A program made the translations under genes and the position numbers. Shown here piece after piece: positions 9,946 through 50,091 of a stretch of DNA of 64,000 nt. Within the stretch, counting starts at the first letter, position 1; every line of letters starts with the position of its first letter. Under the pieces are notes generated by a model. It searched no databases. It saw nothing but the letters and a program-made list of their open reading frames with translations, and had not been told where the DNA came from. This DNA is from Isurus oxyrinchus. Lineage: Eukaryota. The stretch covers positions 496,001-560,000 of the forward strand of contig JANJGN010000121.1 in assembly GCA_026770705.1 (NCBI GenBank), read 5' to 3'.

Positions 9946-9985
9946 CTTCGAGAAGTGACAGGAGGAAGTAGGATTTCCCGATCAT
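9946..9985 (-). CDS. G1 leader (signal peptide) exon CDS, MIGKSYFLLSLLE
   Basis: ATG plus 40 nt to G|gtaat donor (phase 1), acceptor ttcacag at 10026. Four paralogous copies in the window. Confidence 0.85.
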
Positions 9986-10435
9986 TGTCCACTCCCAGGT
10001 ACTTCATAAGCTTCTGACTCTCAAACTGTGAAAGAGAAAGGAGTTAATGAGACCTCACCTCTTGTCCGACAGCTCTCAAGAGATCAGAACTGTTTTTGGA
10101 CAATGTCTTTACAGACTAATTTGATTCTCTGTGGGATGATAGGTGCTCTGCAGAGAGTTACAAGGCTTTAAGAAAGAAAAACATTAAAGGATTTGCATTT
10201 CTATAGCACCTTTCACCACCTCAAGACGTCCCAAAGCTCATGTCTCTGCACTTCCCTCATCCCTTGAGCTAGAAAGATGTTCTGTACAACAGACTTGAGT
10301 CTCACACCCAGATCTCAATAATCAGTAGAAATCTTTCAAAGGCATCAATCATTGGAATCTGTCTTTATAAAGTCACAACATCAACAAAGGACGGTGTTGG
10401 TGGTGGAAGTGAATTCCAATCGTTCCGTTACTTAC

Positions 10436-10520
10436 CCAGGACCTGTCCGACTGCTCGCCTGGGGAGGAACTGCCCACACGCTCTGCTTGGGCTGAATGAC
10501 CTCTTCCTGTGCTGCTCCCT
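10436..10520 (-). other. G1 85-nt upstream (5'UTR) exon
   Basis: GG|gtaagt donor ~410 nt upstream of the leader acceptor; same cassette precedes every leader. Confidence 0.7.
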
Positions 10521-10799: not shown

Positions 10800-11820
10800 C
10801 GGAGGGAGTGCTGCACTGTCAGCGGGACTCTACTGTGGGAGTGCTGCACTGTGGGAGGGTCAGTAATGTGGGAGTGCTGCACTATCAGAGGGTCAGTAAT
10901 GGGAGAGTGCTGCACTGTCAGAGGGTCAGTAATGAGGGAGTGCTGCACTGTCAGAGGGTCAGTAATGTGGGAGTGCTGCACTGTCAGAGGGTCAGTAATG
11001 AGGGAGTGCTGCACGGTCAGAGGTTCAGTACTGAGGGAGTGCTGCACTGTCAGAGGGTCAGTAATGTGGGAGTGCTGAACTGTCGGCGGGTCTGTATTGA
11101 GTGAGTTCCGCACAGTCAGAGGGTCAGTATTGAGGGGGTGCCGGACTGTGGGAGGGTTAGTACTGAGGTAGAGCCGAGTGTGAGAAGATATCCTTTCATG
11201 GCAAAGTTTAACTGGAATTTATTTAAACAGAATTCTTGTACTGTGTGTTATTGCAAAAGAAAGGATTTGAGGAACTAAGTCTTGTTCCCGTAAGCCTAAA
11301 AATAATTTTCACCGATTCAATGATTTAGCATTGAAACCTCCCTCTTTGGGCACCAGTCTTGATTGAATCAACTCGAACAGCACCGTGGGAGGGTGAGTAC
11401 TGAGGGAGTGCAGCACTGTGGGAGGGTGAGTACTGAGAGAGGGCTGCGCTGTGGGAGGGTGAGTACTGAGGGAGTGCTGCACTGTCAGAGAGTCTGTACT
11501 GAGGGAGTGCTGCACTGTCAGAAGGTGTGTACCGTGGGAGTGCTGAACTGTCGGAAGGTCAGTAGTGAGGGAGGGATACAGTGTCAGAGGATCAGTACTG
11601 AGGGAGTGCTGCACTGTGGATGGATGAGTACTGAGGGAGTGCTGCACTGTCAGATTGTCAGCCATGAGGGTGTGCTGCACTGTCAGAAGGTCAGTGCTGA
11701 CAGGGTGCTGCACTTGAAAAGGGTCAATAATGAGGTAGTGCAGCACTGTCAGAGGGACAGTAATGAGGGAGCGCTGCACTGACCGAGGGTCAGGATTGAG
11801 GAAACGCTGCACTGTCAGTT
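10800..11820. repeat. Two 33-bp tandem arrays (agggtcagtactgagggagtgctgcactgtcag) separated by ~210 bp
   Basis: Visible units; produce the spurious STDPLTVQHSL ORFs. Confidence 0.9.
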
Positions 11821-12529: not shown

Positions 12530-13140
12530 ATAAGCTTTTCATAAATGGAGGGATTGAGAACAAACACAGGGAGGTTATGCTGAACATTTATAAAGCTCTG
12601 GTTAGGTCACAGCTAGAGTATTGTGTCCAGTTCTGGTCTCCTCACTTTGGGAAGGAAGTGAGGGTCCTTGAGAGGGTGGGGAGGAGATTGAGCAGAATGG
12701 GTCCAGGGATGAGGGATTTTAGCTACAAGGTTGGGTTGGAGAAGCTGGGGTTGTTCTCCTTGGAGCAAAGGAGATTGAGGGGGGATCTGATCGAGGTGTA
12801 CAAGATGATGATGGGTTTTGATACGGTAGACAAAGAGAAGCTGTTGCCATTAGCTGATGGGACAAGGACTGGGGGACACAGATTGAAGGTTGTGGGCAGT
12901 GGGGGGATGTGAGGAGGAACTTTTTTACACAGCGAGTGGTAATGAGCTGGAACTCGCTGCCTACGAGGATGGTGGAAGTGGAGACGATGAACGATTTCAA
13001 AAGGAAATTGGATGGACACTTGGAAATAAACTTGCAGGGATACGGGGATAGAGCGGGGGAATGGGACTGAGTGGATTGCTCTACACAGAGACAGCATAGA
13101 CTTAATGGGCTGAATGGTCTCCTACTGTGCTGGAATGCCT
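12530..13140 (+). mobile_element. CR1-like LINE 3' fragment
   Basis: YKALVRSQLEYCVQFWSPH...LFSLEQRRLRGDLIEVYK plus 3' tail. Confidence 0.88.
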
Positions 13141-13393: not shown

Positions 13394-15061
13394 CTAGAGA
13401 ACACACAGAAAGAAATCATCACTGACTCTCCGCTTTCAATCTCTCACTCTGGCTGAACAATCAAGCTTCATATCACTGCAACATTTGCTGTAATATTGAC
13501 CCATCCACTGGGATTCAATGTGGAATGAATGTTTTCATTGTAAACACTCTAAGAGTGGACAATCGGAACTTTCCCCTTAGCGTGGAACATTGGTGAGAAT
13601 GGATCATTGTGCTGTTGGACTCCCTGTCCAATGTTACTCTCCATCGCTGTGTACAGGATTGTGCTGTAGAAAATTCTGGAAACGTTTAGTGCAGGGTGGA
13701 AATCCATCTCGGACGCGTGTGCGAATCGAGCAGAATCGAGATGGACTTCCCCACGGACTTACACCCCCCGCTTAATAAACAGTTCCAATCTTTACCCAGA
13801 GAGAGGGGAGAATGTGGAACTCACTCCCACAGGGATTGGTTGAGGTGAACAGTATCGATGTATTTAAGGGGCAGGAGGGTCGGTAACCAGAGGGACACAG
13901 ATTGACCAACTGGAGGGGGAGATGATGAGAATTTGTTTTGACAGAGCGAGTTGTTGTGATCTGGAAGGTGCTGCCTGAAAGGGCGGTGGAAGCAGATTCA
14001 ATAGGAACTTTCAAAAGGGAAATTGGATAAACACTTGAAGGAGGAAGATGGGGGCAAAGTGGAGTGGTGGTTAGTGGATCTGATTGGATAGAACATTGAA
14101 AGACCTGGCACAGGCACAGTGGGCTGAATGGCCTCCTCCTGTGCTGTATCATTCTCCGCTTCCATGATCTCTCCCCCAGTCAGTAACCACTCCAGATCCC
14201 TCTTGAAGGCGACAGAGAAACAGGAACTACCACACCCACTGACAGCACATTCTCAAGGATCCCTACTCTCTGGGAAAAGATGAACTCCCCAACATCCAGC
14301 CTATTCCTGCTTCCCAGAGAGTGTAAACCCTTCAGGGAGGCACTGAGGAAGTTTTCAATAAAATGAATTATCAAATCTATCATTTGAGAAATAATTTAAT
14401 TCTGATGAACTCACAGCTTGTGTAGCAAACTGGGAAGTGGAGTTGCTTGAAAAGCTGGGAAACACAAGGATTAAGTGCTACAATGCCACCACTGGTGGGA
14501 GACTGTAACTACAGCGTGACGTTTACATAGGCAGTCATCATTATAAACAGGGGCATTGGACATACTGGGAAATATGTGCACTGGAAAGGTGAGTAAATGA
14601 TGTAAGATTTTCACCAGCAGGAATTCTCTAACTAAACCTCTCCACTTCTCTCTTACTCTCAGATACACAAACAAAATCACACAGAATCAGATAAGGAGGA
14701 GTTGGGGCCGGTGATTGTTCGAAGGGTTAGCTTTCAGGAAGCTTCTTAAAGGGAGAGAGAGAGTTGGAGAGGCAGAGAGTATCTGTGAGTGTCTCTATGC
14801 ATCTGAGTGTCTGTAATAGACTTTGTAATTTCCATTTCTTCCATAAACATGATTGGGAACACAAATCCCAGAATCCAGGCCAACTCTCCAGTGCAGTACT
14901 CAGGTAAGCCACAGGGCAGTGTGTGCTAGTGTGTTTGTTTGTGAGTGTGTCTTTGTAATTGCTCATACATGTGTGTCTGCACGTGTCTATTTAGTTCTGT
15001 ATATTTGTGTGTGTTTGTGCAATGTTTGAATCTGAGAGAGATGTTGTCTGTGTACACTCAC

Positions 15062-17766: not shown

Positions 17767-17806
17767 CTTGGAGAAGTGACAGGAGGAAGTAAGATTTCCC
17801 GATCAT
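17767..17806 (-). CDS. G2 leader exon CDS, MIGKSYFLLSLLQ
   Basis: ATG, phase-1 donor gtaat. Confidence 0.87.
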
Positions 17807-18256
17807 TGTCCACTCTCAGATATTTCATCCATTTCTCACTCTCAAGCTGTGAAAGAGAAAGGAGTTAATGAGACCTCACCTCTTGTCCGACAGCACTCAA
17901 GAGATCAGAACTGCTTTGAGACAATGTCTTCACAGACTAATTTGATTCTCTGTGGGATGATAGGTGCTCTGCAGAGAGTTACAAGGCTTTAAGAAAGAAG
18001 AACAATGAAGGATTTGCATTCCTATAGCACCGTTCACCACCTCAGCGCATTCCAAAGCTCATGTCCCTGCTCTTCCCTCATCCCCTGAGCTAGAAAGATG
18101 TTCTGTACAACAGACTTGAGCCTCACATCCAGATCTCAATAATCAGTAGGAATCTTTCAAAGGCATCAATCATTGGAATCTGTCTTTATAAAGTCACAAC
18201 ATCAACAAAGGACGGTGTTGGTGGTGGAAGTGAATTCCAATCGTTCCGTTACTTAC

Positions 18257-18341
18257 CCAGGACCTGTCCGACTGCTTGCCTGGGGAGGAACTGCCCACAC
18301 GCTCTGCTTGGGCTGAATGACCTCTTCCTGTGCTGCTCCCT
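18257..18341 (-). other. G2 85-nt upstream exon; PU.1 motif at 18384-18396
   Basis: Paralog of 10436-10520. Confidence 0.7.
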
Positions 18342-18619: not shown

Positions 18620-18870
18620 CCCCAGTGTCAGTACTGAGGGAGTGCTGCACTGTCGGATGGTCATTACTGAGCGAGTCTTGCACTATTGTAAGGTCAGTAC
18701 TGAGGGAGATCTCCACTATTGGAGGGTCAGTACTGAGGGAGATCTCCACTGTTTGAGGGTCAGTAATGAGGGAGTGCTGCACTGTCAGAGGGACATTAAT
18801 CAGGGAGTGCTGCACTGTTGGAGGATCAGTACTGAGAGAGTGCCGCACTGTTGAAGGGTCAGTATTAAGG
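18620..18870. repeat. 33-bp tandem array
   Basis: Visible units. Confidence 0.85.
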
Positions 18871-18948: not shown

Positions 18949-19033
18949 CCAGGACCTGTCCGACTGCTCGCCTAGGGAGGAACTGCCCACACGCTCTGCT
19001 TGGGCTGAATGACCTCTTCCTGTGCTGCTCCCT
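18949..19033 (-). other. Extra copy of the 85-nt exon upstream of G2
   Basis: Same sequence and donor; PU.1 motif degenerate (GAGGATGT). Confidence 0.65.
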
Positions 19034-19189: not shown

Positions 19190-21340
19190 CATGCAACAAG
19201 CTCGAGGGACTGAATGGGCCTCCTCCTGTTCCTGAGTAACAGGCTCGAGGGGCTGAACGGTCCTCCTCCTGTTCCTGTGTAACAGGCTTGAGAGGGCTGA
19301 ATGGGTCTCCTCCTGTTCCTGTGTTATAGGCTCAAGGGACTGAATGGGTCTCCTTTTTCTGTGCAACAGGCTCAGGTGGGCTGAATGGCCTCCTTCTCTC
19401 ACTGTGTACCAGGCTCATGGGGCTGAGTGGGCCTCCTCCTGTTCCTGTGTAAAAGGCTAAAGGGGCTGAATTGGCCTTCCCCAGTTCCTGTGTACCAGGC
19501 TCGAGTACATTAGGAGCATCATTGGGAGCAGCATTTCACTTGCACTTCCCTCAATTTAATCTACTGCATTCACTGCTCCCAATGTGGTCTCCTCTACATG
19601 GGACAGACCAAACACAGACTGGGTGATCGCTCTGATGAACACCTTCGGTCTGTCCACAAGCATGACCCAGACCTCCCTGTCGCTTGCCATTTTAACACCC
19701 CACCCTGCTCTCATGCCCACATGTCTGTCCTTGGCCTGCTGCATTGTTCCAGTGAAGCCCAACGCAAACTGGAGGAACAGCACCTCATCTTCCGACCTTC
19801 CCGACTGAATATTGAGTTCAACAATTTCAGATCATGAACTCTCTCCTCCATCCCCACCCCCTTTCCAATCTCCCTTTTTCCAATAATTGATCATTTTTAA
19901 TATTTATTTTATTTATATATTTTTCTTTTCCCACCTATTTCCATTATTTTTAAATGTTTTACATTTGTTGTTGTATCTCTACCTTTTAGCCTATTTCAAT
20001 CCTTTCCCCCACCCCACCCCCACTAGGACTATCTGTCTCTTGCTCGTCCTGCTTTCTACCCTTAATGTCCCCATTAGCACATTCCTCAGATAATATCACC
20101 ACCGTCAACACCCCTTTGTCCTTTTGTCTATCACATCTTTGGCAACCTCTTCTTTACCTCCACCTATCACTGGCCCACAATCCAGCTCTACCTGCCCCAC
20201 CCCCTCTACCAGCTAAAACGTCACCTCATTTCTCGATTTACCTAGTTCAGATGAAGAGTCATACAGACCCAAAACTTCAAGTTGTTCCTCTCCACAGATC
20301 CCGTCAGACCTGCTGAGTTTTTCCAGCTATTTTTGTTTTTGTTCCCGTTCATGTGGAACAGGCTTGAGTGGCTGAATGGAGCCCCTAATGTTCCTCTGTA
20401 ACAAGCTTGTGGAGGCTGAATGGGCCTCCTGTACCTGTGTAACAGGCTCAAGGGGACAGAATGGGCCTCCTCCTCTTCCTGTGTAACAGGCTCGAGGGGG
20501 CTGAATGGGCCTCCTCCTGTTCCTGTGTAACAGGCTCGAGGGGACAGAATGGGCCTCCTCTTGATCCTGTAAAACAGGCACGAGGGACTGCATAGGTTTC
20601 CTATTCTTGTGTAAGAGGGTTGAGAGACTGAATGTGCTCTTCCTGTTCCTGGGTAACAGGCTCAGGTGACTGAATGGCCTCCTCCTGTTCCTGTGTTACA
20701 GGCTCTATGGGGCTGAATAGGACTCCTCCTTTTCCTGTGTAACAGGCTCGAGGGGCTGAGAGGCTCTCCTGTCCCTGTGGAAGGGTGTTGAGGGACTGAA
20801 TGTCCTCTTCCTGTTCCTGTGTAATAGGCTCATGAGGCTGATGGGCCTTCTCCTGTCCTCATGTAACAGGATTGAGTGGCTGAATGGGCCTCCTCCTGTT
20901 CCTGTGCAACAGGCTCGAGGGGCTGAATGGGCCTCCTCCTGTTCCTGTGTAACAGGCTCGAGGGGCTGAATGGGCCTCCTCCTGTTCCTGGGTAACAGGC
21001 TTGAGGGGGCTGAATGGGGCCTCCTCCTGTTCCTGTGTAACAGGCTTGAGCTGCTGAATGTCCTCCTCTCATTAAAAATAAATACTGCAGATGCTGTAAA
21101 TCTAAATAAAATCAGAAAATGCTGCATTAACTCAGCAGGTCTGGCAGCAGCTGTGGAGAGAGAAACAGAGTTTTTTCTTTGAGACTCTGAAGAAGGGTCA
21201 TACGGATTCGAAATGTTAATTCTGTTTATCTCTGCACAGATGCTGCCAGAACTACTCAGTCTCCAGCATTTCTGTTTTTGTTTCAGGTGCTCTCTTGTTC
21301 CTGAGTAGCAGGCTCGAGGGGGCTGAATGGCCTCCTCCTG
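19190..21340. repeat. ~43-bp tandem array (caggctcgaggggctgaatgggcctcctcctgttcctgtgtaa), interrupted
   Basis: Unit matches the CR1-like LINE 3' tail seen at ~1930-1975. Confidence 0.85.
19505..20345 (+). mobile_element. Penelope-like element fragment (GIY-YIG endonuclease plus 3' region)
   Basis: LIYCIHCSQCGLLYMGQTKHRLGDR..EH...PVACHFN...RKLEEQHLIFR; followed by a gatgaagagtcat...gacctgctgag tail that also occurs solo at ~16090-16220, 21080-21285, 31325-31460 and 60770-60865. Confidence 0.8.
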
Positions 21341-22399
21341 TTTCGATTCAATGGGCAGTCAAAGCATGTGTCTGATTTTGGACATGGAACCCAATTCTGT
21401 CCTCAGGACATTGATAGAGGGAGAGACCAGATACAGATCAATGCAGGAGGATTATTTATTTTCCCAATCTTTGATCCAAGCATCTCATCAAACACAGAGC
21501 GGAACCAGGATCGAGTATGTTGGTCTCTGTAATCTGTAACACATCGCACAGTCCACCCGTCCACTCAGCCATCAGGATGGATGCTAATTGTACTCTCCAA
21601 GTGTGAAAGACTAAAATGATGGTTTATTGCAGCTCTGTCTCATTCTGTTATCAAAGCTGTCTCATCCATCCATCACATATTGAAGAAGATAAACCTGCAA
21701 CCAAATTTTCACATCATAATTTCCTATGTTCATTGGCTATATCAATGTAAACATGTCACGTTGTACTGATGAACTCCCATCATTGCTGGCACTGTAGCAC
21801 AAGTTATCCTCTAAGCTGCAGAGAATTTCTCAAATCTCCAATCAAATTGCTTCCCTGTTTCCCAGATTGTTGTTCGTTTCGCTGTTTAACGATGAAGTGT
21901 AAAATCCAAATATATTTCTGAAAATACTTTTGACTACAAAATGCTGAGTAAATTTTAACAATCTCCTCTGCTCCAATTATCCACCGATGCTGCATTTCCT
22001 GAAGTCTACACTGGCTGATGAATATTCTGTAAACACTGACAGACAGGAAGCTGAATAACAGAATGAAAATTAACTCATAATCACGGACACGGGATTGAAT
22101 TTGTCCGTTCTGTCCTGGTACATCATCGAACGATATCTAAAGACATTTACAATCAGAATGGAGAGAAGGATGTTTCCAACAGTGAGGGACAATTCTGAAG
22201 GAGGATGTTCGAATTGAAACCCACAGACAATCATCCTGGATAGATCATTCCGAAGAAATTCCATCAGATTGTAACAAGAGGTTTAAATCTATTTCCTGGG
22301 AGTGAGTTCCTGTGGATATTAGGAAGGTAAATTGGAGTTTTGAATGATTCTCCCATTCTGTATTCTCCCCACACTGTGTGTGTCTCATTCTTGCTCAGT

Positions 22400-22516
22400 T
22401 TATAAATTCCCATAAACAGAATCCTTGGCAAAATCACAGTTTGCGTAAAGATCATCATCTGTATCAGGATTGACTCCGCGGTTAGGTTTCATTTCCAGAA
22501 CCTTTTCATCTTTCTT
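22400..22516 (-). CDS. G3 terminal cytoplasmic exon KKDEKVLEMKPNRGVNPDTDDDLYANCDFAKDSVYGNL*
   Basis: tttctattacag acceptor, phase 0, two Tyr motifs, TAA stop; AATAAA candidate at 21623-21628. Not in the ORF track. Confidence 0.82.
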   Translation of the reverse strand, partial: KKDEKVLEMKPNRGVNPDTDDDLYANCDFAKDSVYGNL

Positions 22517-22614
22517 CTGTAATAGAAACAGAAATGATCAGAGTGACAATCAGAGTGATCAGTGTTTAGTATTATTGATCCAAATCGAAAATTCCACCCA
22601 CAATAGATACATTA

Positions 22615-24580
22615 ATTATTGATACTGAACAGGGTTTGATTATTGATTCTGAACAGTGTTTGATTATTGATTGTGAACAGTGTTTGATTATTGATACTGA
22701 ACGGGGTTTGATTACTGATTCTGAACGGGGTTTGATTATTGATACTGAACGGAGTTTGATTATTGATTCTGAACGGGGTTTGATTATTGATTCTGAACGA
22801 GGTTTGAATATTGACACTGAATGGGGTTTGATTATTGATCCTGAACAGGGTTTGATTATTGATCCTGAAAGGGGTTTGATTATTGATACAGAACAGTGTT
22901 TGATTATTGATACTGAACAGGGTTTGATTATTGATTCTGAACAGTGTTTGATTATTGATACTGAACGGGGTTTGATTATTGATTCTGAACAGGGTTTGAT
23001 TATTGATTCTGAATGGGGTTTGATTATTGATACTGAACGGGGTTTGATTATGGATTCTGAATGGGGTTTGATTATTGATTCTGAATGGGGTTTGATTATT
23101 GATCCTGAACAGGGTTTGATTATTGATTCTGAAAGGGGTTTGATTATTGATTCTGAAAGGGGTTTGATTATGGATTCTGAACGGGGTTTGATTATTGATC
23201 CTGAACAGGGTTTGATTATTGATCCTGAAAGGGGTTTGATTATGGATTCTGAAAGGGGTTTGATTATGGATTCTGAACGGGGTTTGATTATTGATACTGA
23301 ACGGGGTTTGATTATTGATTCTGAAAGGGGTTTGATTATTGATACTGAACGGGGTTTGATTATTGATTCTGAACGGCGTTTGATTATTGATACTGAACGG
23401 GGTTTGATTATTGATTCTGAATGGCGTTTGATTATTGATACTGAACGGGGTTTGATTATTGACATTGAACGGGGTTTGATTATTGATTCTAAATGGTGTT
23501 TGATTATTGATTCTAAACGTTGTTTGATTATTGAACCTGAATGGAGTTTGATTATTGATTCTGAACTGGGGTTGATTATTGATACTTAACGGGGTTTGAT
23601 TATTGACATTGAACGGGGTTTGATTATTGATTCTAAATGGTGTTTGATTATTGATTCTAAACGGTGTTTGATTATTGAATCTGAATGGAGTTTGATTATT
23701 GATACTGAACAGTGTTTGATTATTGATTCTGAACAGTGTTTGATTACTGATTCTGAAAGGGGGTTGATTATTGATACTGAACGGTGTTTGATTATTGATT
23801 CCGAACGGGGTTTGATTATTAATTCTGAACGGGGTTTGATTATTGATACTGAATGGTGTTTGATTATTGATTCTGAATGGGGTTTGATTATTGATTCTAA
23901 ACGGTGTTTGATTATTGAACCTGAACGGAGTTTGATTATTGATACTGAACAGGGTTTGATTATTGATTCTGAAAGGGGGTTGATTATTGATACTGAACGG
24001 GGTTTGATTATTGATTCTGAACGGGGTTTGATTATAGATACTGAATGGTGTTTGATTATTGATTCTGAATGGGGTTTGATTATTGATACTGAACGGGGTT
24101 TGTTTATTAATTCTGAACGGGGTTTGATTATTGATTCTGAACGGGTTTTGATTATTGATACTGAACGGGGTTTGATTATTGATTCTAAACGATGTTTGAT
24201 TATTGAACCTGAACGGAGTTTGATTATTGATTCTGAACAGTGTTTGATTATTGATTCTGAAAGGGGGTTGATTTTTGATACTGAACGGGGTTTGATTATT
24301 AATTCTGAATGGGGTTTGATTATTGATACTGAATGATGTTTGATTATTGATTCTGAACGGGGTTTGATTATTGATACTGAATGGGTTTTGATTATTGATT
24401 CTGAACGGGGTTTGATTATTGATTCTGAACGGGGTTTGAGTATTGATTCTGAACGGGGTTTGATTATTGATACTGAACGGGGTTTGATTATTGATACTGA
24501 ACGGGGTGTGATTATTGATTCTGAACGGGGTTTGATTATTGATACTGATCGGGGTTTGATTATTGATTCTGAACGGTGTT
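22615..24580. repeat. 24-bp minisatellite (ttgattattgattctgaacggggt), roughly 80 copies, in the last intron of G3
   Basis: Directly visible. Confidence 0.97.
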
Positions 24581-24709
24581 GGGTGTGAGTTTGGTTGGGT
24601 TTGGGAGTGACTGTATAAAACATTGCAGATACAGGACTGGAGCAGCCATATCAATAACCAGGGTACTGGAGCAGCTGAGAGGCTGGGGATCCTGTGGTGT
24701 GTGACTCAC

Positions 24710-24814
24710 CTGATTCCTCAAAGCCCAACCACGCTCACAGTTTTCATAAACAGGACCTCGATGTTCATCAGCACGATGGTTCGATTTGATTCCTGCTTTC
24801 ACCTCGCCTCTCTT
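24710..24814 (-). CDS. G3 cytoplasmic exon KRGEVKAGIKSNHRADEHRGPVYENCERGWALRNQ (105 nt, phase 0-0)
   Basis: ctctattacag acceptor, CAG|gtgagt donor, YEN motif, paralogous to the terminal exon. Confidence 0.78.
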
Positions 24815-25325
24815 CTGTAATAGAGATGGAAATGGACAGAGTGACAATCAACATGATGTGTATTCGGTGTTGGGTTTGATTACTGGGGAGAGAGTTCCAG
24901 ATTTCCACTCCCCTTTGTGTGAAGAAGTGCTTCCTGACATCACCCCTGAATGGCCTGGCTCCAATCTGAAGTTCCAGCCCCCTTGTTCTGGACTCCACCC
25001 GACCCCCACCACCCACCCCCACCCGAGGGAATAGCTTCTCTCTATCGACCCTATCGAGTGTTTAATCAGTTTGAACCCCTCAATTAGATCCCTCCTTAAT
25101 CTTCTAGACCCGAGGGAATATAATCGTAGACTGTGTGTAACCTGTCTGCATAATTTAACCAGAAAGATGTTCTGTACAACAAACCTGAGCTTCACACCCA
25201 GATCTCAATAATCAGTAGAAATCTTTCAAAGGCATCAATCATTGGAATCTGTCTTTATAAAGTCACAACATCAACAAAGGATGGTGTTGGTGGTGGAAAT
25301 GAATTCCAATCGTTCCGTTACTTAC

Positions 25326-25410
25326 CCAGGACCTGTCCGACTGCTCGCCTGAGGAGGAACTGCCCACACGCTCTGCTTGGGCTGAATGACCTCTTCCTGT
25401 GCTGCTCCCT
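25326..25410 (-). CDS. G3 juxtamembrane exon (85 nt, phase 2-0), (K)GSSTGRGHSAQAERVGSSSGEQSDRSW
   Basis: ctaat..acacag acceptor, gtaagt donor. Bridges the phase-2 end of the TM exon to the phase-0 cytoplasmic exon with no stop. Confidence 0.68.
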
Positions 25411-25699
25411 CTGTGTATTTAATTAGAAAGGGTGGATGTGTCACTGTGAGTCAAATCAGGAATTGGGGAACAATTGTGAAAACCCTTTCACTGAAATGTA
25501 GGGCCTTAGTGTTGTGTTGTAAGCAAACTGTTAACCCTTTGTGTCCTGACTCTGTGACGTGATTCCTGTGTAAAGCTGAGCAGTCGTTGAGCGACTTTCA
25601 ATTCACTGCTCAGTCCAGATGTTGAGGTGGATCTTCTGAAGGAGCAGATGTTGCTCAGCACTCCTAAAAAATGTCAGATACTGAACATTGTGTAAGAGG

Positions 25700-25910
25700 A
25701 TGAGAGAGAAAATGAGAAGGAGAGCATTAGTGGAGACTGGAGAGAGAGTGAATGAGAGAGAGAATGAGAAGGAGAGCATTAGTGGAGATAAGAGAGAGAG
25801 TGAATGAGAGAGAGAATGAGAAGGCGTGCATTAGTGGAGATTGGAGAGAGAGTGAATGAGAGAGAGAATGAGAAGGAGAGCATTAGTGGAGATAAGAGGG
25901 AGTGAATGAA
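25700..25910. repeat. GA-rich ~50-bp tandem repeat, about 4 copies
   Basis: gagagaatgagaaggagagcattagtggaga... units. Confidence 0.75.
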
Positions 25911-26218
25911 ACATGGAAAATGGAAAGAGATTGCATTCACTAACAAAAGAAAGGTTTTCATTTATATAGCACCTTTCACATCCTCAGGAGGTCACAATGT
26001 ATTTTATGGTCTGGGTCAACACTGCCAGTTACAGGACTGAGTTGTGAAACAGTGAAAGGTGGATGAGATGTTAAACAGTAGGTGAACATCAAAACTCTTC
26101 AGGGGCTGTGAAGGGTTTTGGATGGTAAAAGGTGCTATTGAAATGCAAGTTCTTTCTATAAGGAGAGAAGGTTGAAGAAAAAATGTTTGAAATCAACCAA
26201 TTAAACCTTCGCACTTAC

Positions 26219-26315
26219 TTTCTCACACACTTGAAAATGAAGAATCCACTCAGTCCAACATTCAAACAGATTCCAGCTCCAAGCAATCCTGCTTTCCATT
26301 CATTGGAATCTCGCC
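26219..26315 (-). CDS. G3 transmembrane exon (97 nt, phase 1-2), (R)RDSNEWKAGLLGAGICLNVGLSGFFIFKCVR
   Basis: ttttacag/gtaagt; 20-aa uncharged Gly-rich segment followed by basic residues, similar in style to CD33-type TM exons. Confidence 0.82.
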
Positions 26316-27540: not shown

Positions 27541-27580
27541 GAGCTAATAAAAACAGAATGTTCAATTCTGTGTAACTCAC

Positions 27581-27862
27581 GTTCCACAGTGATGGTTATG
27601 AACCCCTCCACTGCTCCATGTTCATTCTCTGCCACACACTGATAGTCTCCAGTGTCCCTGGATGTAACGTGAGGAATCACCAACCACAGCTCATTGTTGG
27701 AACTTGTTCTGTTCATTGGGACATTAAGATGTCGCCACGTCAGGTTAGAAGCTGGGAAGCTCTCGACAGAGCAGATTATCACTGCAGAATTCCCCTCAAT
27801 TATATTGATCGATGAAGCGTTAATCATATCAAGAGAAGTAATTGATAGGTTCCGTGGTGCAT
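27581..27862 (-). CDS. G3 third C2 exon (282 nt, phase 1-1)
   Basis: (Y)APRNLSI...IICSVESFPASNLTW...DTGDYQCVAENEHG...TVE; tttag/gtgagt. Confidence 0.9.
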
Positions 27863-28745
27863 CTAAATACAAATAAAGGTTTCATTGTGAGCAAACACAG
27901 TGCACAGCAAGACTCCATGATACATCTCTCTCTATTTGGTGTCTATGTGCATTTCAAGGTTCTTTCCTGTTTTAAGTTCCTATGTCAACTTTTATAATGG
28001 TCACTGCTGGTGTTTTTCTTTTTGTACATTCATGGGAAGTGGCTGTATCTATCTAGACCAGCATTTATTACCCATCCCTAATTGCCCTTGAGGAGGTGGT
28101 GGTGAGTTTTTCACCCCCACAGAATTCCCAGCCTCTGACCGGCTCCTGTAGCCACAGTATTTATGGCCGGTCCAGTTAGTTGTTTGGTTAACATCCCCCA
28201 GGATGTTGATTGTGGGGGATTCAGTGATAGGAAACTCACTGAACATCAAGGGGAGATGGTTAGATTCTCTCTTGTTGGAGATGATCACTGCCTGGTGCTT
28301 GTGATGCATTAATTGTCATTTCTCAGCCCAAGCTGAGTGTTATTCAGCTCTTGCTGCGTGTGGATATGTAAACTGTCACGCTGTAATTACAGCCTTCCAC
28401 CAGAGGAGACACTGTCGGGCTAGGAGAAAAGAAAATGTCTTTCACATCATCAGGATGTTCACAGGGATTTGACAGTGGAGGAATTGCTTTAGAATAATGG
28501 GGTATTGAGTGATAAACCTACAATTCTCTGTGCAGGGGGCTGCTCGTCCAATACAGGGTCTTGTTCAGCTGATGTCGTCAGTGTTTTAGAGCAGAATCTG
28601 GAGCAACACTCCAGTGCAGCACAGGGAGAACAGACAACTCACACATGTCTGTGTGTGTGTGAGCAAGCACACGTGTGATTCTGTGTATGTTTCCTTCTGT
28701 GTGTGTGCATGCAGGTGTACACACCTGTGCACATGTGGGATTGCA

Positions 28746-28927
28746 NNNNNNNNNNNNNNNNNNNNNNNNNNNNNNNNNNNNNNNNNNNNNNNNNNNNNNN
28801 NNNNNNNNNNNNNNNNNNNNNNNNNNNNNNNNNNNNNNNNNNNNNNNNNNNNNNNNNNNNNNNNNNNNNNNNNNNNNNNNNNNNNNNNNNNNNNNNNNNN
28901 NNNNNNNNNNNNNNNNNNNNNNNNNNN
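28746..28927. other. Assembly gap (N run)
   Basis: Ns; begins directly after the GT donor of the 28930-29211 exon. Confidence 1.
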
Positions 28928-28929
28928 AC

Positions 28930-29211
28930 ATTCCACAGTGTTGGTTCTGAATCCCTCCACTGCTCCATGTTCATTCTCTGCCACACACTGATAGTCTCCA
29001 GTGTCCCTGGATGTAACGTGAGGAATCACCAACCACAGCTCATTGTTGGAACTTGTTCTGTTCATTGGGACATTAAGATGTCGCCACGTCAGGTTAGAAG
29101 CTGGGAAGCTCTTGACAGAGCAGATTATCACTGCAGAATTCCCCTCAATTATATTGATCGATGAAGCATTAATCACATCAAGAGAAGTAATTGAGAGATT
29201 CTGTGGTGCAT
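28930..29211 (-). CDS. G3 second C2 exon (282 nt, phase 1-1)
   Basis: (D)APQNLSI...YQCVAENEHG...TVE; ttttag acceptor, GT donor at the gap edge. Confidence 0.85.
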
Positions 29212-29339
29212 CTAAAAACAAATAAACATCAATTAAGTTACACTGACTGTGAAGCACTTTGAAAGACACTGAGAATGTGAAAGGTGTGATATCAATATAG
29301 GTTCTTTCACCACAAAGCCCATAATCCAGCCAGACACCT

Positions 29340-30035
29340 CAGTTCAGTACTGAGGGTGTGCTGCACTGTGGGAGGGTCAGTACTGAGGGAGTGCTGCACT
29401 GTCAGAGAGTCAGTACTGAGGGAGTACTGCACCATCAGAGATTCAGTACTGAGGGAGTGCTGAACTGTCAGAGGGTCAGTACTGAGGGAGTGCTGTACTG
29501 TCGGTGGGTAAGTACTGAGGGAGTGCTGCACTGTCAGAGAGTCAGTAAGGAGGGAGTGCTGCACTGTCAGAGGTTCAGTACATAGGGACTGCTGCACTGT
29601 CTGATGGTCAGTACAGAGGGGTTGTTGCACTGTCGGAGGGTCAGAAATGAGGATGTGCTGCACTCTCAGAAGGTCAGTACTGAGGGGGTGCTGCACTGTC
29701 GAAGAGTCATTACTGAGGGGGTGCTGCACTGTGGGAGGGTCAGTACTGAGGGAGCACTGCACTGTTGAAGGGTCAGTACTGAGTGAGTGCTGCACTGTCG
29801 AAGGGTCAGTACTGAGGGAGTGCTGCACTGTTAGAGGGTCAGTACAGAGGGAGTGCTGCACTGTCAGAGGGTCAGTACTGAGGGAGCACTGCACTGTCAA
29901 AGGGTCAGTACTGAGGGAGTGCTGCACTGTCAAAGGGTCAGTACTGAGGGAGTGCTGCACTGTCAGAGGATCAGTACTGAGGGAGTGCTGCAGTGTTGGA
30001 GAGTCAGTATTCAAGGACTGCTGCAGTGTCAGAGG
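29340..30035. repeat. 33-bp tandem array, about 21 units
   Basis: Visible; the equivalent introns of G2 and G4 carry only about one unit. Confidence 0.92.
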
Positions 30036-32120: not shown

Positions 32121-32848
32121 CTTAAAGAATCACTTCATTGGCTGTGAATCAGTTTAGGATCGTCCTGAGGTGGTGAAAGGCGCTATGGAAATGTGAGACT
32201 TGCTTTTGTATTTTGAAAGCAGGTTTCCAAGATTGAGATGGGAACTGAGAGGTAACAACAATCAGCAGCAACTTTCCTATTTTCAAACTTGGTGGGGAAT
32301 GTGTCACTGAGCTGAATACACTTTCACTCCCAGACCCTTGAATTGCCAACACTGGGGTGTGGGTGATGGAGCAGTCCACAGCTCATGGAACCCTGGCTCA
32401 TCATTCTCTCAGAGATCTGGGTCACTGATCCCATTGCTCTCTATGGGATCTTCCTGTGCACAAACTCACTGCCACGTTAGACAGTGACTATACTTCAAGA
32501 ATTTCTTCATTGTCTGTGAAGTGATTTGGTACGTGGTGAAAGGTGCTATAGAAATGCAAGTCTTTACTTTGTCGATTTGCCAGACTTTTAAATAGGGATT
32601 AGAGAGTTCTATGTGAGTGGATAACCTGATAACATTGATGGACACAGTCAACACATTTAACCATTGATATTAAAGTGAGTATTAGACGTTGCTTTAGGAC
32701 TGAATTGGAAGCTATCACCAGGTTATTGAGATCAGACAGTGTGTTATAATAAGCTGTGTTTTGTGTTAATATGTAAACGTCACAGTTTGTGTTATTTCCC
32801 ACTGAGTGTTGAATGTGAATTGTTGAGTAATTATAACACAGCACTTAC

Positions 32849-33217
32849 CAGAAACGTGAAGCTGGGTTACAGGGTAATAGTTATGTCTCGGACCATTGTC
32901 AAATTCTATTCTGAAAAAATAAGGTCCTGCATCTTCCCGTCTGATGTTGTTTATAATCAGGGAACAGTCGCCATCTTTCAGGTCTCCAGACAGCCGGGTC
33001 CGATGGTGGAACCGTGGTAACTCGTGACTGTGATCCTTGGAGTGAAAGGCAATGGGAGCCCAGGGAATCTGTTTCTCATTATTAAACCAGACTCCACCTC
33101 GTGGTTGGCTTTCCAAATGTGCTGGATAACTGTAATGACATGGAATCTGTACACACGAACCTTCCTGCGCTGTCACCTCTCGTGGAGTGTCACCTTTCCA
33201 CTCTTGTGACAGTCCAA
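32849..33217 (-). CDS. G3 first V-set exon (369 nt)
   Basis: Intact, YFFRIE. Confidence 0.92.
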
Positions 33218-36200
33218 CTGGGGAGAGAAATATCAATATTTAACTCTGGATGTTTTTTTGATCCATAATTCTTGATATCCACTCCCTCCATCACTGGGGC
33301 ACAGTGGCTGCAGTTTGGACCATCTACAGGACACACAAGTAACTCCCCAAGGTTTCACAATGGATCGATGAGAGTCCTGGACACAGGAGTGGACAAGTTC
33401 ATTCTACCTTGGTTCATGGTCCTCAGGACTCTATTTAGTTTTTTCAAATTATTCATTCATGGGATTTATTACCCATCCCATGTCCATCAGAGGCATTTAA
33501 TAGTCAACCACATTGCGGTGGGATTGGAGTGATATGTAGGCCACACTGGGTAAGGGTGGCAGATTTCCTTCCCTGAAGGTGATCAGTGAACCAGGCTTTT
33601 TAATCCCATTCATCTGCCATGATGGAATTCACACCCAGGGCCCCAGATCATCACCCTGGGCCTCTGGAATACTAGCCCAGTGACAATACCTCTCTGCTAC
33701 CGCTTCCCCTTAGTGAAGCCAGTCTTCTACCCAACACAGTGTCTACAAGACGCACTATTTGAGATCCATTCAATGCTGATTTACAAGACAGGACAATGGA
33801 TTAGGAGCCCTCAGAACTCCCCCCATTATCACCGTCATGAATCACTAATTAGCCTAACATTCCTGTCTGCTCTTCAACACAGCTGATTGAATCAGATTAG
33901 CCAATCTGATTGGTGTTCATTCCCTCTTCAACTTTTAAGGAATCACCAATCACTCGGCCTCTAGTTATTCCCCTGCCCACAAGAGGGAACATTCTCTGTC
34001 TACCCAGTCAACCAAAACATTTCATCTAATCCTAGTGGTGCTTGAGTATATAGTCGGGAATCCAGGGCAATGGAGCCTCAGGAGAAGAGATGGAAACGCT
34101 GTGAGGTGGAATGTTACTGAGGCCATCCGAGTTGAAGCGACTTTTGGAGAGAATTCCAAGGCAAGATCTTCGAAGTTGAAGATTGGAATCCCTCATGAGA
34201 GAAACAGAGTTTCAGTGAGATTGGTTGACTGACAGTGTTCACTGATGTCCGGGTGGGTTGTTGTGAAATCCATGGGATCTGTCTTGGTCGCGTTTACAAT
34301 TTAATGAATAATGTGGCTGTGAGACCACAGTTTGTCTGTTAATTCACATGAGCTAATGTTAATCCAGAATGTTAGGGTATAAGGTGGATATTGTGAATTA
34401 TTTTATCTTTCTGAGCTGGTGCAGTCAAGTTTATTTTTGTTTGTTTAAAATCCATGGAATTTTGTAGCTTTATTCTCTTCGCAAGTGTCTTAAATCTCAA
34501 ACCTCTTCTACTTGAAACAAAATATTATTGGTTCCTAACTATAAATTTTCAAAAAAATTGGGTGTCTGTTCCTCCATCAGCAACTCTTCAGAATCCTGCT
34601 GAAGTCACGGATATTTCAGAAGGACAGGGAACAAGAAGTTTCTGGTATCAGCGTTTTGTGTGGGGCCCAGTTCAGTTTGAACAAATAAACAACACCATCT
34701 TTGAAAGTCATGAACCCACTGCAGCGGCACCTCCGACACATGCAGAGCTCAGGCGAGAGGCGCTTTGTTAGTGTGTTTCACAGTGTCTGCTGGAGTAGGG
34801 TCAGTGCTGAGAGGGTCTGCTCAAGGATCATAACAACCTGCACTTGCACCTTCCAAGTAATAAGATTTTGTAAATGTATTCATTCATGGGATGTGGGCGT
34901 CGCTGCCAAGGCCAGCATTTGCTGCCCATCTCTAATGTCCCGTGACATAATCTCTGTAGCAGAGTAGAGACAATCATGATCACTCAGGATATTTGACATC
35001 TATCCACATGAGCAGCTTTACCTTCCTTCTCTCTTTCAGTTATCTTACTCCCTTATTGAAGTTTCTAGCATGGTGAGAACTGGATGGTTTGCTCGGACAT
35101 TTCAGAGGAACCACGTTGCTATGAGTCTGGAGTCACATGTAGGCCAGACCAGATATAGACGGCAGATTTCCTTCCCTAAAGGCCATTAGTGAACCAGATG
35201 GGTGTGTATGACAATCGATGATAGTTTCATGGTCTCCATTACTGAGACTAACTCCCATTAGTGTAAACAGAGTGAACAGTTTTCCATTGATCCCACCTTT
35301 CCCGTTCTCTCCGGTATTTTACACACTATTGCTCGATAATTTGATTCTGCCAAGGACCCCTTGGAAAATTATGGACACCAATTAGACCACCGATGGAATA
35401 AGGAATCTCGTTGGATCCTCATTGTCTGAGGAATCTCTATGCATTCTCATTGTCTAAGGAATCTCTTTGGATCCTCATTGTCAAAGGGATTATTTCTGAT
35501 CCAAACCCCATATTGTTGTATTGTTGATTCCGATGCAGCATTGTAGACTGACTTGTCCCCAAGCTCAGCACTGACCCTACTCCAGCAGACCCTGTGAAAC
35601 ACACTAACAAAGTGCCTCTAGCCTGAGCTCTGCATGAGTCGGAGGTGCCACTGTGGTGGGTTCATGACTTTCAAAGATGGTGTTGTCATTTTTTTTGTTC
35701 CAACTGAACTGGGCCCCACATGAAGTGTTGATACCAAAGACCTTGTGTTCCCTGTCCTTCTGAAACATCTGTGATTCAGCAGGATTCTGAAGATTTGCTG
35801 ATAAGGGTCTTAAATTGTCTGATTGTTGATTGATACAACACAGGAGGAGCTCATGTGACCCATCGTGCATGTGCTGATTCTTTCCCAATTCCTCTCCAAC
35901 ACCTTTCGCACATTCCTGCAAATTTCCCTTCAAGTATTTATCCAGTTCCCCTTCTGAAAGTTCCTGTTGAATCTGCTTCCACCGCTCTTTCAGGCAGTGA
36001 GGCAATGGTCTCTCTCTGAGCTGCAAAGTGCCCAGATTCCGTGAAATTTAAACTATGCAGCAGATCAGAGACAATCATGATAACTCAGAATATTTGTCAC
36101 CTTTACACACAGACAGCTTTGCCTTCCTTCTCTCTTTCAGTTATCTTGCTCTCTTATTGAAGTATCTAGCAAGGTGAGAATGGACAGGAAGTGTGACACT

Positions 36201-36674: not shown

Positions 36675-36714
36675 CTTGGAGAAGTGACAGGAGGAAGTAA
36701 GATTTCCCGATCAT
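36675..36714 (-). CDS. G3 leader exon CDS, MIGKSYFLLSLLQ
   Basis: ATG, phase-1 gtaat donor. Confidence 0.87.
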
Positions 36715-37164
36715 TGTCCACTCCCAGATATTTCCTCAGCTTCTAACTCTGAAGTTCTGAAAGAGAAAGGAGTTAATGAGACTTCACCTCTTGTCCGACA
36801 GCTCTCGAGAGATCAGAACTGCTTTTAGACAATATCTTCACAGACAAATTTGATTCTCTGTGGGATGATAGGTGCTCTGCAGAGAGTTACAAGGCTTTAA
36901 GAAAGAAAAACACTGAAGGACTTGCATTTCTATAGCACCTTTCACCACCTCAGGACACCCCAAAGCTCATGTCCCTGCTCTTCTCTCATCCCTTGAGCTA
37001 GAAAGATGTTCTGTACAACAGACTTGAGCCTCACACCCAGATCTCAATAATCAGTAGAAATCTTTCAAAGGCATCAATCATTGGAATCTGTCTTTATAAA
37101 GTCACAACATCAACAAAGGACGGTGTTGGTGGTGGAAGTGAATTCCAATCGTTCCGTTACTTAC

Positions 37165-37249
37165 CCAGGACCTGTCCGACTGCTCGCCTGGGGAGGAACT
37201 GCCCACACGCTCTGCTTGGGCTGAATGACCTCTTCCTGTGCTGATCCAT
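37165..37249 (-). other. G3 85-nt upstream exon; PU.1 motif at 37292-37304
   Basis: Paralog of 10436-10520. Confidence 0.7.
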
Positions 37250-50006: not shown

Positions 50007-50091
50007 AGGGAGCAGCACAGGAAGAGGTCATTCAGCCCAAGCAGAGCGTGTGGGCAGTTCCTCCCCAGGCGAGCAGTCGGACAGGTCCTGG
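50007..50091 (+). other. G4 85-nt upstream exon
   Basis: GG|gtaagt donor at 50092. Confidence 0.7.

What the first reader, a model, noticed from the sequence alone, without database searches (positions are those of the whole stretch)
25326..25410. One 85-nt exon in two jobs: 5'UTR exon of every gene and coding juxtamembrane exon of G3
Six near-identical copies exist. Four lie ~410 nt before a leader, one is extra (18949-19033), and one lies between the G3 TM exon (ends phase 2) and the tail exon (starts phase 0). There it is exactly phase 2-0 and open, similar in size to the 82-nt J exons. I found no better bridging exon in that intron. About 165 nt of downstream intron is also near-identical between the coding and UTR copies. 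Its 5' part resembles an antisense CR1-like tail. It also provides homology between the 5' and 3' ends of genes that could drive recombination, or let a TM exon splice into a downstream gene.
Basis: partly seen in the sequence, partly recalled or inferred. Interest (0 to 1): 0.8.

Follow-up and report, generated by a model that had tools for sequence, protein, structure and literature searches.

The report
Shark receptor exon with two jobs
An 85-base exon that sets the reading frame of one shark Siglec-type immune receptor's inner tail has also been copied, splice sites included, in front of four neighbouring receptor genes, where it most likely acts as a non-coding leader exon and can let neighbouring genes be spliced together.

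Summary
There are six copies with 0-3 mismatches. Four lie with their donor exactly 450 nt before a start codon. One lies between the G3 membrane-span exon and its tail exons, with fitting phases.

The coding job is well supported by comparison. Among 168 proteins held, 17 of 18 with the G3-type membrane-span motif carry a homologous peptide directly behind it. They come from seven shark species in three orders. The tail exons behind it are conserved in the frame that only this exon opens.

It is a skippable exon. RNA contigs of one sample join 26219 directly to 24814, and Scyliorhinus canicula has one annotated isoform with the exon and one without. No inclusion junction was among the 15 of 156 joints shown, so inclusion in this genome is inferred.

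The 5'UTR job is indirect. Two Cetorhinus models read membrane span, 85-nt copy, second copy, next gene's leader.

This is a new variant of known kinds: a frame-switching tail exon, exon duplication and read-through chimeras. Public automatic annotation already predicts parts of it. Interest is moderate.

The parts
25326..25410 (-). 85-nt juxtamembrane cassette exon of G3 (J85), phase 2 to 0. Its peptide is GSSTGRGHSAQAERVGSSSSGEQSDRSW.
   Evidence: Sequence and frames. It was the best bridging candidate. A homologous peptide lies behind the TM in 17 of 18 annotated shark proteins with that TM motif. It is skipped in the contigs of X1 and X2.
25161..25480 (-). Block of about 310-320 nt shared with the 5' copies. 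It covers about 57-70 nt of upstream intron with the branch-point-like ctaat and the acceptor, the exon itself, and 165 nt of downstream intron.
   Evidence: blastn identity of 94.6-96.1%. Column-by-column comparison. The homology ends where a CR1-like LINE fragment begins (ORF 24851-25204).
26219..26315 (-). G3 transmembrane exon. It ends with two bases of a codon, followed by gtaagt.
   Evidence: RNA joints 26314/5 to 27580/1 in 4 of 4 runs, and 26219 to 24814 in 2 of 4 runs.
24710..24814 (-). G3 tail exon A, 105 nt, phase 0 to 0 (KRGEVKAG...PVYENC...RNQ). Read one base off, as after skipping J85, it gives REAR and then a stop.
   Evidence: Joint 22516 to 24710 in X2 and X5. 31 of 35 and 28 of 35 residues are identical to the Carcharodon and Cetorhinus models.
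22400..22516 (-). Coding part of G3 tail exon B (KKDEKV...LYANC...VYGNL, then a stop). The 3'UTR runs on below 22300.
   Evidence: X5 record 17 covers 22300-22516 and 24710-24814. 32 of 38 and 31 of 38 residues are identical to the Carcharodon and Cetorhinus models.
10436..10520 (-). Copy at the 5' end of G1. The donor is 450 nt before the ATG at 9985.
18257..18341 (-). Copy at the 5' end of G2. The donor is 450 nt before the ATG at 17806.
18949..19033 (-). Extra copy between the G3 3' end and the G2 copy. Both splice sites are intact. Homology stops 27 nt behind the donor, at a 33-bp minisatellite.
   Evidence: This layout matches the two tandem copies read in Cetorhinus XP_078390090/92.
37165..37249 (-). 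Copy at G3's own 5' end. The donor is 450 nt before the ATG at 36714. Two G>T changes create an ATG at its 5' end.
50007..50091 (+). Copy at the 5' end of G4, a gene on the + strand. The donor is 450 nt before the ATG at 50542.
9946..10025 (-). G1 leader exon: 40 nt of 5'UTR plus MIGKSYFLLSLL. It is an internal exon with its own acceptor. Equivalents are G2 17767-17846, G3 36675-36756 and G4 50502-50581 (+ strand).
   Evidence: The same exon edge is used in the read-through models P0029, P0161 and P0162.

Best explanation
G3 is a Siglec-type receptor gene of a shark whose closest annotated relatives are lamniform. Between its transmembrane exon, which ends in phase 2, and its two tail exons, which read in phase 0, lies an old, skippable 85-nt exon.

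Coding role. When the exon is included, it adds 28 Ser/Gly-rich residues and sets the frame for a tail of about 100 residues with three YxN tyrosines. When it is skipped, the frame shifts and the protein ends four residues into the next exon (REAR, then stop). That stop lies 89 nt before the last exon junction, so the skipped form makes a tail-less receptor or, if the usual 50-55-nt rule holds in sharks, a decay target (inference).

Leader role. A piece of about 310-390 bp holding this exon with both splice sites was copied in front of the leader exon of a neighbouring gene. It then spread with, or was homogenised among, the tandem paralogues. There its strong donor (TGG|gtaagt) is spliced to the leader-exon acceptor 410 nt downstream, so the former coding exon serves as a non-coding 5' exon (inferred).

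Consequence. The copies keep their acceptor, so read-through transcripts from an upstream gene's TM exon can splice into them and on into the next gene. This is seen in annotated Cetorhinus models and is not tested in this genome.
For: Anatomy. Six copies. Phases and splice sites. Best bridging candidate in the interval. Identical 450-nt spacing to four ATGs, and leader exons with their own acceptor.

Age and coding constraint. Among 168 proteins held, 18 carry the TM motif, and 17 of those have a J85-like peptide directly behind it (alignment scores 43-140). They come from Carcharodon, Cetorhinus, Scyliorhinus canicula, Stegostoma, Rhincodon, Chiloscyllium and Hemiscyllium. The annotated peptide is about 24 to 28 residues long in different species, by my reading of the tails printed. 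The tails behind it stay in frame and conserved (YENC...WALRNQ; IYANC...VYGN), with exon A 16-31 of 35 identical and exon B 12-32 of 38 identical.

Cassette behaviour. The direct joint 24814 to 26219, with GT..AG ends, is present in X1 and X2. S. canicula XP_038669795.1 has the exon, and XP_038669796.1 lacks it and ends with a frame-shifted 8-residue tail. The window's own exon B reads RKMKRFWK-stop in that same shifted frame.

Leader role and chimeras. Cetorhinus XP_078390090.1 and XP_078390092.1 read TM, a copy in frame 1, a copy in frame 0 (27-28 of 28 identical to the window's copies), then the leader exon and an out-of-frame V exon. The window has the same order: G3 TM, the 18949 copy, the 18257 copy, the G2 leader. 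In the RNA contigs, the summed depth over 25300-25499 is 5 to 45 times that over the equally shared intron part 25100-25299 in all 4 runs. The tool warns that depth is a poor measure.
Against: - No junction 26219>25410 or 25326>24814 was among the 15 of 156 joints displayed. In X1 the direct-join contig has a depth (1855.6) close to that of the C2b-TM joint (2228.6), so skipping may dominate in that sample.
- In X5 and X6 the TM contigs carry 43 and 35 further letters, and the exon-A contig carries 72. These letters were not reported as the direct join, but I could not see what they are.
- All contigs shown over the shared intron part carry the paralogue-type letters (25191, 25282, 25299). Nothing shown is specific to the G3 copy.
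- The acceptor is weak by the crude score (0.9 against 2.9-3.9 for neighbouring exons).
- The exon is open in all three frames, so openness is no evidence.
- The G3 copy shows no significant excess conservation of exon over flank: 1 private change in 85 nt against 5-6 in 165 nt.
- No junction from an 85-nt copy to a leader exon, and no transcription start, was shown for this genome. X6 record 26 runs through the 5' edge.
- The RefSeq proteins are automatic predictions, and isoforms of one gene are not independent.
Confidence: 0.7

Rival explanations
1. The 25.3-kb copy is a dead by-product of a local duplication or LINE-linked insertion in the TM-to-tail intron. In this reading G3 only makes the direct TM>24814 splice and a tail-less receptor, and the phase-0 reading of exons A and B is not used.
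For: The direct join is the only TM-to-tail joint displayed (X1, X2). The acceptor is weak. The copy abuts a CR1-like LINE fragment. It is open in all frames, so openness proves nothing.
Against: Exons A and B are conserved in phase 0 from orectolobiform to lamniform sharks, and that phase needs a bridging exon whose length is 1 mod 3. 17 of 18 annotated relatives place the homologous peptide exactly there. After a direct join, the stop lies 89 nt before a further used junction, 24710>22516. In X5 and X6 the letters next to the TM exon and exon A were not reported as the direct join.
Confidence: 0.1
2. The five upstream copies are not regular 5'UTR exons. In this reading they are relics of the duplication unit that are spliced only in read-through transcripts from the upstream gene, and normal G1-G4 mRNAs start elsewhere.
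For: No junction or transcription start was shown here. The only models seen that contain the copies are read-through chimeras (P0161, P0162). X6 record 26 does not respect the 85-nt 5' edge.
Against: The leader exon is an internal exon with a conserved acceptor 40-42 nt before the ATG, so some upstream exon is needed. The nearest conserved donor is that of the copy, at an identical 410-nt distance in four genes. The core of about 307 nt is 97.4-99.7% identical among the four 5' copies, while the wider 5' blocks are 92.7-94.3% identical. Contig depth over the exon part is far above that over the shared intron part in 4 of 4 runs (with the tool's caveat). Four of the five upstream copies hold no ATG.
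Confidence: 0.2
3. History reversed for the present sequence. In this reading an old, more diverged J exon in G3 was recently overwritten by gene conversion from the abundant 5' copies. The near-identity would then reflect 5'-to-J transfer, although the 5' family itself once came from a J exon.
For: Leaving out the first 17 columns, where the homology fades, I count 8 differences in 290 nt between the G3 copy and G1. That is about the same as G1 against G2 (7 in 290; my count from the columns). It is closer than the 92.7-94.3% of the wider 5' blocks. The window's J peptide matches the 5' copies of the window and of Cetorhinus (26-27 of 28) better than the J exons of Cetorhinus (25) or Carcharodon (24). 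Weaker, gapped similarity continues upstream to about 25560, as expected around a conversion tract.
Against: The differences are few (1-4 residues), and position 20 varies without pattern. Downstream the similarity ends abruptly at a LINE fragment, with no older homology beyond it.
Confidence: 0.3

Closest known systems
RefSeq models of shark 'Siglec-13 / CD33-like / MAG-like' genes. Examples: Carcharodon carcharias XP_041037222-5 and XP_041037180.1; Cetorhinus maximus XP_078390089-92; Scyliorhinus canicula XP_038669795/6; Stegostoma tigrinum XP_048379657.2 and XP_059497215.1; Rhincodon typus XP_048476476.1; Chiloscyllium punctatum XP_072409733.1; Hemiscyllium ocellatum XP_060708619-22.
   Same: They have the same TM motif, a J85-like peptide directly behind it, and the same YxN tail exons. 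TM is 21-29 of 31 identical, J is 11-27 of 28, A is up to 31 of 35 and B is up to 32 of 38.
   Different: They are automatic predictions in other species. None is identical to the window. No record or paper that I saw notes that the exon is also present at the 5' ends of neighbouring genes.
Frame-switching alternative exons in the cytoplasmic tails of Ig-superfamily immune receptors. Examples are the mouse CD33 isoforms that differ by a short insert not divisible by three (recalled, not checked here) and KIR splice variants (PMC6288254; I saw only the search listing and the start of the abstract).
   Same: A short exon whose length is not a multiple of three lies between the TM and the signalling tail. 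Its inclusion or skipping decides whether the signalling motifs are translated.
   Different: Here the same exon sequence is also found, with its flanks, upstream of four paralogues' leader exons.
Conjoined (read-through) genes in tandem gene clusters.
   Same: Annotated Cetorhinus isoforms run from one receptor's TM exon into the next gene's leader and V exons. S. canicula XP_038668957.1 does likewise from a different tail exon.
   Different: The bridge is built from duplicated copies of the upstream gene's own cassette exon. The chimeras seen are out of frame, so they look like by-products or decoys rather than fusion proteins.
Exonised transposon fragments.
   Same: Nt 7-33 of the exon, which encode the conserved TGRxHSA part, resemble a dispersed motif. 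The motif occurs at 7 other places in the window with 2-7 substitutions, against 0 in 20 shuffles. Some of these lie antisense just behind the ends of CR1-like ORFs.
   Different: The match is only 27 nt long. I judged the orientation for 3 of the 7 places from ORF lists alone. No repeat library was available.

Membership tests
Siglec (sialic-acid-binding Ig-like lectin) receptor gene | N-terminal V-set Ig domain of the CD22/Siglec type | tested here: met
   G3 V exon ORF 32769-33239(-) hits Pfam V-set (E 2.9e-11, 44 bits against a cut-off of 26) and Ig_CD22 (E 5.5e-09, 36.9 against 27).
Siglec (sialic-acid-binding Ig-like lectin) receptor gene | Conserved arginine of the sialic-acid site on the F strand, and the extra cysteines of the V-set domain | tested here: inconclusive
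   The V exons read ...GSCVQIPC...DCSLII...YFFRIEF. Assigning these residues to the ligand arginine and to the Siglec disulfides is recalled knowledge, not a structural test.
Siglec (sialic-acid-binding Ig-like lectin) receptor gene | C2-set Ig domains followed by a TM and a tyrosine-motif tail | tested here: met
   C2-set_2 (E 5e-09) and Ig_3/I-set (E 1.7e-12) hits on the two C2 exons. TM and YxN tail exons.
Siglec (sialic-acid-binding Ig-like lectin) receptor gene | Binds sialic acid | not testable with these tools
   This needs a glycan-binding assay.
Alternatively spliced coding cassette exon | Acceptor and donor present, with phases that fit the neighbouring exons | tested here: met
   acag|...|gtaagt, phase 2 to 0. 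The acceptor is weak.
Alternatively spliced coding cassette exon | Skipped form present in RNA | tested here: met
   Joint 24814 to 26219 in X1 and X2, one sample. S. canicula isoform X2 also lacks the exon.
Alternatively spliced coding cassette exon | Included form present in RNA of this genome | tested here: inconclusive
   It was not among the 15 of 156 joints displayed. The letters next to the TM exon and exon A in X5 and X6 remain unidentified.
Alternatively spliced coding cassette exon | Reading frame and peptide conserved in relatives | tested here: met
   17 of 18 proteins with the TM motif, from 7 species. Downstream tail exons are conserved in the dependent frame.
Non-coding 5' (leader) exon | Donor spliced to the acceptor of the exon that holds the ATG | tested here: inconclusive
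   Not shown in this genome. It is seen in two Cetorhinus models of one gene. The spacing and the internal acceptor are conserved in 4 of 4 genes.
Non-coding 5' (leader) exon | Transcription start at or upstream of it | not tested
   No 5'-end data were available. X6 record 26 extends at least 35 nt, plus 83 unlaid letters, beyond the 5' edge.
Conjoined / read-through transcript | One RNA holding exons of two neighbouring genes | not tested
   Seen only in annotated models of Cetorhinus and S. canicula.

The most novel reading that the evidence does not exclude
The exon began as an exonised antisense tail of a CR1-like LINE in an early galeomorph shark. It became the frame switch that turns a Siglec's YxN signalling tail on or off. 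In lamniform-type genomes it was then copied, splice sites and all, in front of neighbouring genes. There it does more than fill a 5'UTR: it is a portable splice bridge that couples tandem receptor genes. Read-through from an upstream gene would at the same time make a tail-less or decoy receptor and interfere with, or feed, the downstream gene's leader. The balance of paired receptors would then be set partly by splicing across gene borders.
Probability: 0.12. Interest if true: 0.7.

Novelty: new variant of a known kind. Interest (0 to 1): 0.45.

Why it matters
This gives a concrete, datable example of a coding cassette exon being reused as a non-coding leader exon inside an expanding immune-receptor cluster.

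It explains odd chimeric isoforms in public shark annotations. It also warns annotators that a junction to an '85-nt exon' in these clusters cannot be assigned to a gene from the exon sequence alone.

For Siglec biology, it shows that the tail of this shark receptor type is controlled by one skippable exon, which can be tested directly.

It does not open a long-standing question. Automatic annotation already predicts the coding exon in seven species.

Tried and rejected
It would keep the frame, but its crude score is -5.2 against 3.9 for 24814, and the joint seen uses 24814 itself.

Other bridging exons in 24815-26218. The next best candidates lie inside the LINE fragment and score lower.

Homology between the 82-nt J exons of the orphan cassettes (47391-47310, 44306-44225) and the 85-nt exon. 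I saw none by eye. Only the first few bases after the acceptor of exons A and B resemble the 82-nt exons. I did not pursue this.

A LINE template-switch origin for the 25.3-kb block, which abuts a 5'-truncated CR1-like fragment. I considered it, but the coding exon is older than any such event and no test was possible.

Protein search with the exon-A ORF. No candidate was found. The length filter hides full-length proteins.

Other look-ups.
No nucleotide outgroup tree or dN/dS was made.
- The search of earlier findings by sequence and by words gave nothing. By genome it gave only general Siglec-cluster notes.
- Two paper searches listed nothing on shark Siglec exon structure or on this exon. 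I saw only listings and the starts of abstracts, and read no paper or supplement. 'Not in print' rests on these two searches only.

Spliced model. I handled it exon by exon.

Full report
What is there. The window holds a cluster of Siglec-type receptor genes. The V exons hit Pfam V-set and Ig_CD22, and the C2 exons hit C2-set_2 and Ig_3/I-set. Earlier notes of the scan place the genome in a shark. The closest annotated proteins are from Carcharodon carcharias and Cetorhinus maximus. None is identical to the window, so I call it only a shark with lamniform-like relatives.

The copies. The 85-nt stretch occurs six times with 0-3 mismatches, and none was expected by chance. On the gene strand each copy reads ...ctaattaaa(t/c)acacag|(A/G-rich exon)...CTGG|gtaagt. 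In G1, G2, G3 and G4 the start codon lies exactly 450 nt behind the donor. The leader exon has its own acceptor 40-42 nt before the ATG. A fifth upstream copy (18949-19033) lies between the end of G3 and the G2 copy.

The sixth copy. The copy at 25326-25410 lies between the G3 TM exon (26315-26219, ending with two bases of a codon) and tail exon A (24814-24710). Exon A is followed, across a 24-bp tandem array, by exon B (from 22516). The block shared between this copy and the 5' copies runs from 25161 to about 25467-25480. Weaker, gapped similarity continues to about 25560. Downstream it ends at a CR1-like LINE fragment. In the 5' copies it ends at a SINE-like stretch.

RNA. I had one run search and one laying of reads. 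All four runs laid (X1 and X2 from one sample of organism A; X5 and X6 of organism B) are contigs labelled 'RNA?'. They carry GT..AG joints, so they do hold spliced RNA.
- The joints confirm five exon ends: 27581/26315 in 4 of 4 runs, 24710/22516 in X2 and X5, and 26219/24814 in X1 and X2.
- The last joint is a direct join that skips the 85-nt copy. The tool marks it 'between: not known'. It gives the same mark to the C2b-TM joint, which record X5-20 appears to show as contiguous. I therefore take the join as direct, but cannot prove it.
- No joint to 25410 or from 25326 is among the 15 of 156 joints displayed.
- In X5 and X6 the TM contigs carry 43 and 35 further letters, and the exon-A contig (record 17) carries 72. 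These letters were not reported as the direct join. They could be the 85-nt exon, but I could not see them.
- All contigs shown over the shared intron part carry paralogue-type letters (25191, 25282, 25299; compare), so they come from the 5' copies.
- Summed depth over 25300-25499 is 5-45 times that over 25100-25299 in all four runs. This fits an exonic family, though the tool warns against reading depth.
- X6 record 26 runs unbroken from 25331 to 25445. So in at least one transcript of a paralogue the exon is not bounded by the AG at 25410/25411.

Comparison. A phmmer search with the C2b exon ORF and two word searches with database proteins gave shark RefSeq models. Cluster look-ups gave their names and further isoforms.
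- Of the 168 proteins then held, 18 have the G3-type TM motif. 17 of these have a peptide homologous to the 85-nt exon's frame-1 translation directly behind it, with local scores of 43-140.
- The 17 are about nine genes in seven species of three orders: Carcharodon and Cetorhinus; Scyliorhinus canicula; and Stegostoma, Rhincodon, Chiloscyllium and Hemiscyllium.
- The closest relatives match all four G3 3' exons: TM 28-29 of 31, J 24-25 of 28, A 28-31 of 35, B 31-32 of 38.
- By my reading of the tails, the J peptide is about 24 to 28 residues long in different species. The tail motifs behind it (YENC...WALRNQ, IYANC...VYGN) stay conserved in the frame that depends on it.
- This is the main reason to accept the coding job. 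The phase-0 reading of exons A and B has been kept across these orders and cannot be reached from the TM exon without an exon of length 1 mod 3.

The exon is a cassette. The one protein of the 18 without the peptide is S. canicula XP_038669796.1 (isoform X2). It goes from the TM straight into a frame-shifted 8-residue end. Its sister isoform X1 (XP_038669795.1) has the J peptide and the YxN tail. The window's exon B read one base off gives the equivalent RKMKRFWK-stop. Exon A read one base off gives REAR-stop, 89 nt before the exon A donor. Together with the direct join in X1 and X2, this makes the 85-nt exon a skippable frame switch. Carcharodon isoform X2 additionally skips exon A, which is in frame.

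The leader job and read-through. Cetorhinus XP_078390090.1 and XP_078390092.1 (isoforms X2 and X4 of the gene whose X1 and X3 carry the normal J-A-B tail) read as follows:
- the TM exon;
- an 85-nt copy in frame 1, differing from that gene's own J;
- a second 85-nt copy in frame 0, 27-28 of 28 identical to the window's copies;
- the leader exon of a next gene, read from its upstream ATG frame;
- a V exon out of frame.
These models show two things. The copies can be used as internal exons with the AG acceptor, and a copy's donor is joined to a leader-exon acceptor. The order matches the window: G3 TM, the 18949 copy, the 18257 copy, the G2 leader. So the 'extra' copy is probably old and shared with Cetorhinus (inference).

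The regular 5'UTR job in G1-G4 rests on four points:
- the internal acceptor of the leader exon;
- the conserved donor at an identical distance in four genes;
- the higher conservation of the roughly 307-nt core (97.4-99.7% among the four) than of the wider 5' blocks (92.7-94.3%);
- the depth profile.
No junction or start site was seen for this genome.

History. The coding role is the older one. It is present in three orders, whereas upstream copies are shown only in this window and implied in Cetorhinus. So the first step was most likely J exon to 5' copy. Within the window, leaving out the 17 columns where homology fades, the G3 copy is about as far from the 5' copies (8 of 290) as G1 is from G2 (7 of 290; my counts). 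Its peptide is nearer to the 5' copies than to the J exons of Cetorhinus or Carcharodon. Later gene conversion in either direction is therefore plausible but unproven. The 33-bp minisatellite lies next to most copies and in the J82-to-tail introns of the orphan cassettes. It is a candidate recombination substrate (inference).

Nt 7-33 of the exon resemble seven other places in the window (2-7 substitutions; 0 in 20 shuffles). Three of these I judge, from ORF lists only, to lie antisense behind the ends of CR1-like ORFs.

Limits.
- The RefSeq models are predictions whose evidence I did not see.
- Isoforms are not independent.
- No nucleotide sequence of relatives could be fetched.
- Only 15 of 156 joints, 24 of about 1,525 loose ends and 31 of about 21,500 contig pieces were displayed.
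- The species of the runs are coded.
- Two paper searches found nothing relevant. I saw listings and abstract starts only, and opened no supplements.

Verdict. This is a new variant of known kinds, of moderate interest.

Noticed in passing
window 42632-48813 (minus strand), with 82-nt exons at 44306-44225 and 47391-47310: Two complete cassettes of an 82-nt exon plus an ITIM-type tail exon, and a third tail exon (48568-48813) without its 82-nt exon. Cetorhinus XP_078389619.1 (P0050) reads two such cassettes in series.
   Followed up: partly
window 8937-11174 versus 51590-49351; 33-bp minisatellite at 10794-11174, 18620-18870, 29340-30035, 43023-43206, 46000-46291, 48952-49732 and 60419-60773: The G4 5' region is an inverted copy of G1's (92.7% identity). 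A 33-bp minisatellite sits at the junction, next to the third orphan tail exon. The same array flanks most 85-nt copies and sits in the J82-to-tail introns. It is a possible recombination substrate.
   Followed up: partly
window 37239-37249 (G3's own 5' copy): Two G>T changes create an ATG at the 5' end of this copy, so it opens a short upstream reading frame. The other five copies hold no ATG.
   Followed up: no
window 9986-10025 and equivalents (the 5'UTR part of the leader exons): An upstream ATG (MKYLGVD...) is out of frame with the main ATG here. In Rhincodon and Stegostoma models it is in frame and used as the start (P0152, P0156).
   Followed up: no
window 22612-24580: About 2 kb of 24-bp tandem repeats fill the intron between tail exons A and B. 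The acceptor regions of A and B (24808-24850 and 22510-22552) are 86% alike, so A and B look like duplicates that flank the array.
   Followed up: partly
window 27579-27877 versus 28928-29226 (next to the N stretch 28746-28927): Part of the C2b exon region is repeated at 96% identity directly beside an assembly gap. This may be a real duplicate exon (relatives have 2-9 such domains) or an assembly effect.
   Followed up: no
window 13106-13132, 14120-14146, 20792-20818, 21319-21345, 35836-35862, 44908-44934, 59809-59835: These places resemble nt 7-33 of the 85-nt exon (2-7 substitutions). Some lie antisense just behind the ends of CR1-like LINE ORFs, which hints that the exon's conserved TGRxHSA part derives from a transposon.
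   Followed up: partly
protein models P0160 versus P0157/P0164 (Carcharodon carcharias): Annotated isoform X2 skips the in-frame exon A (J joined straight to B). The tail therefore has a second optional exon, which carries one of the three YxN sites.
   Followed up: no
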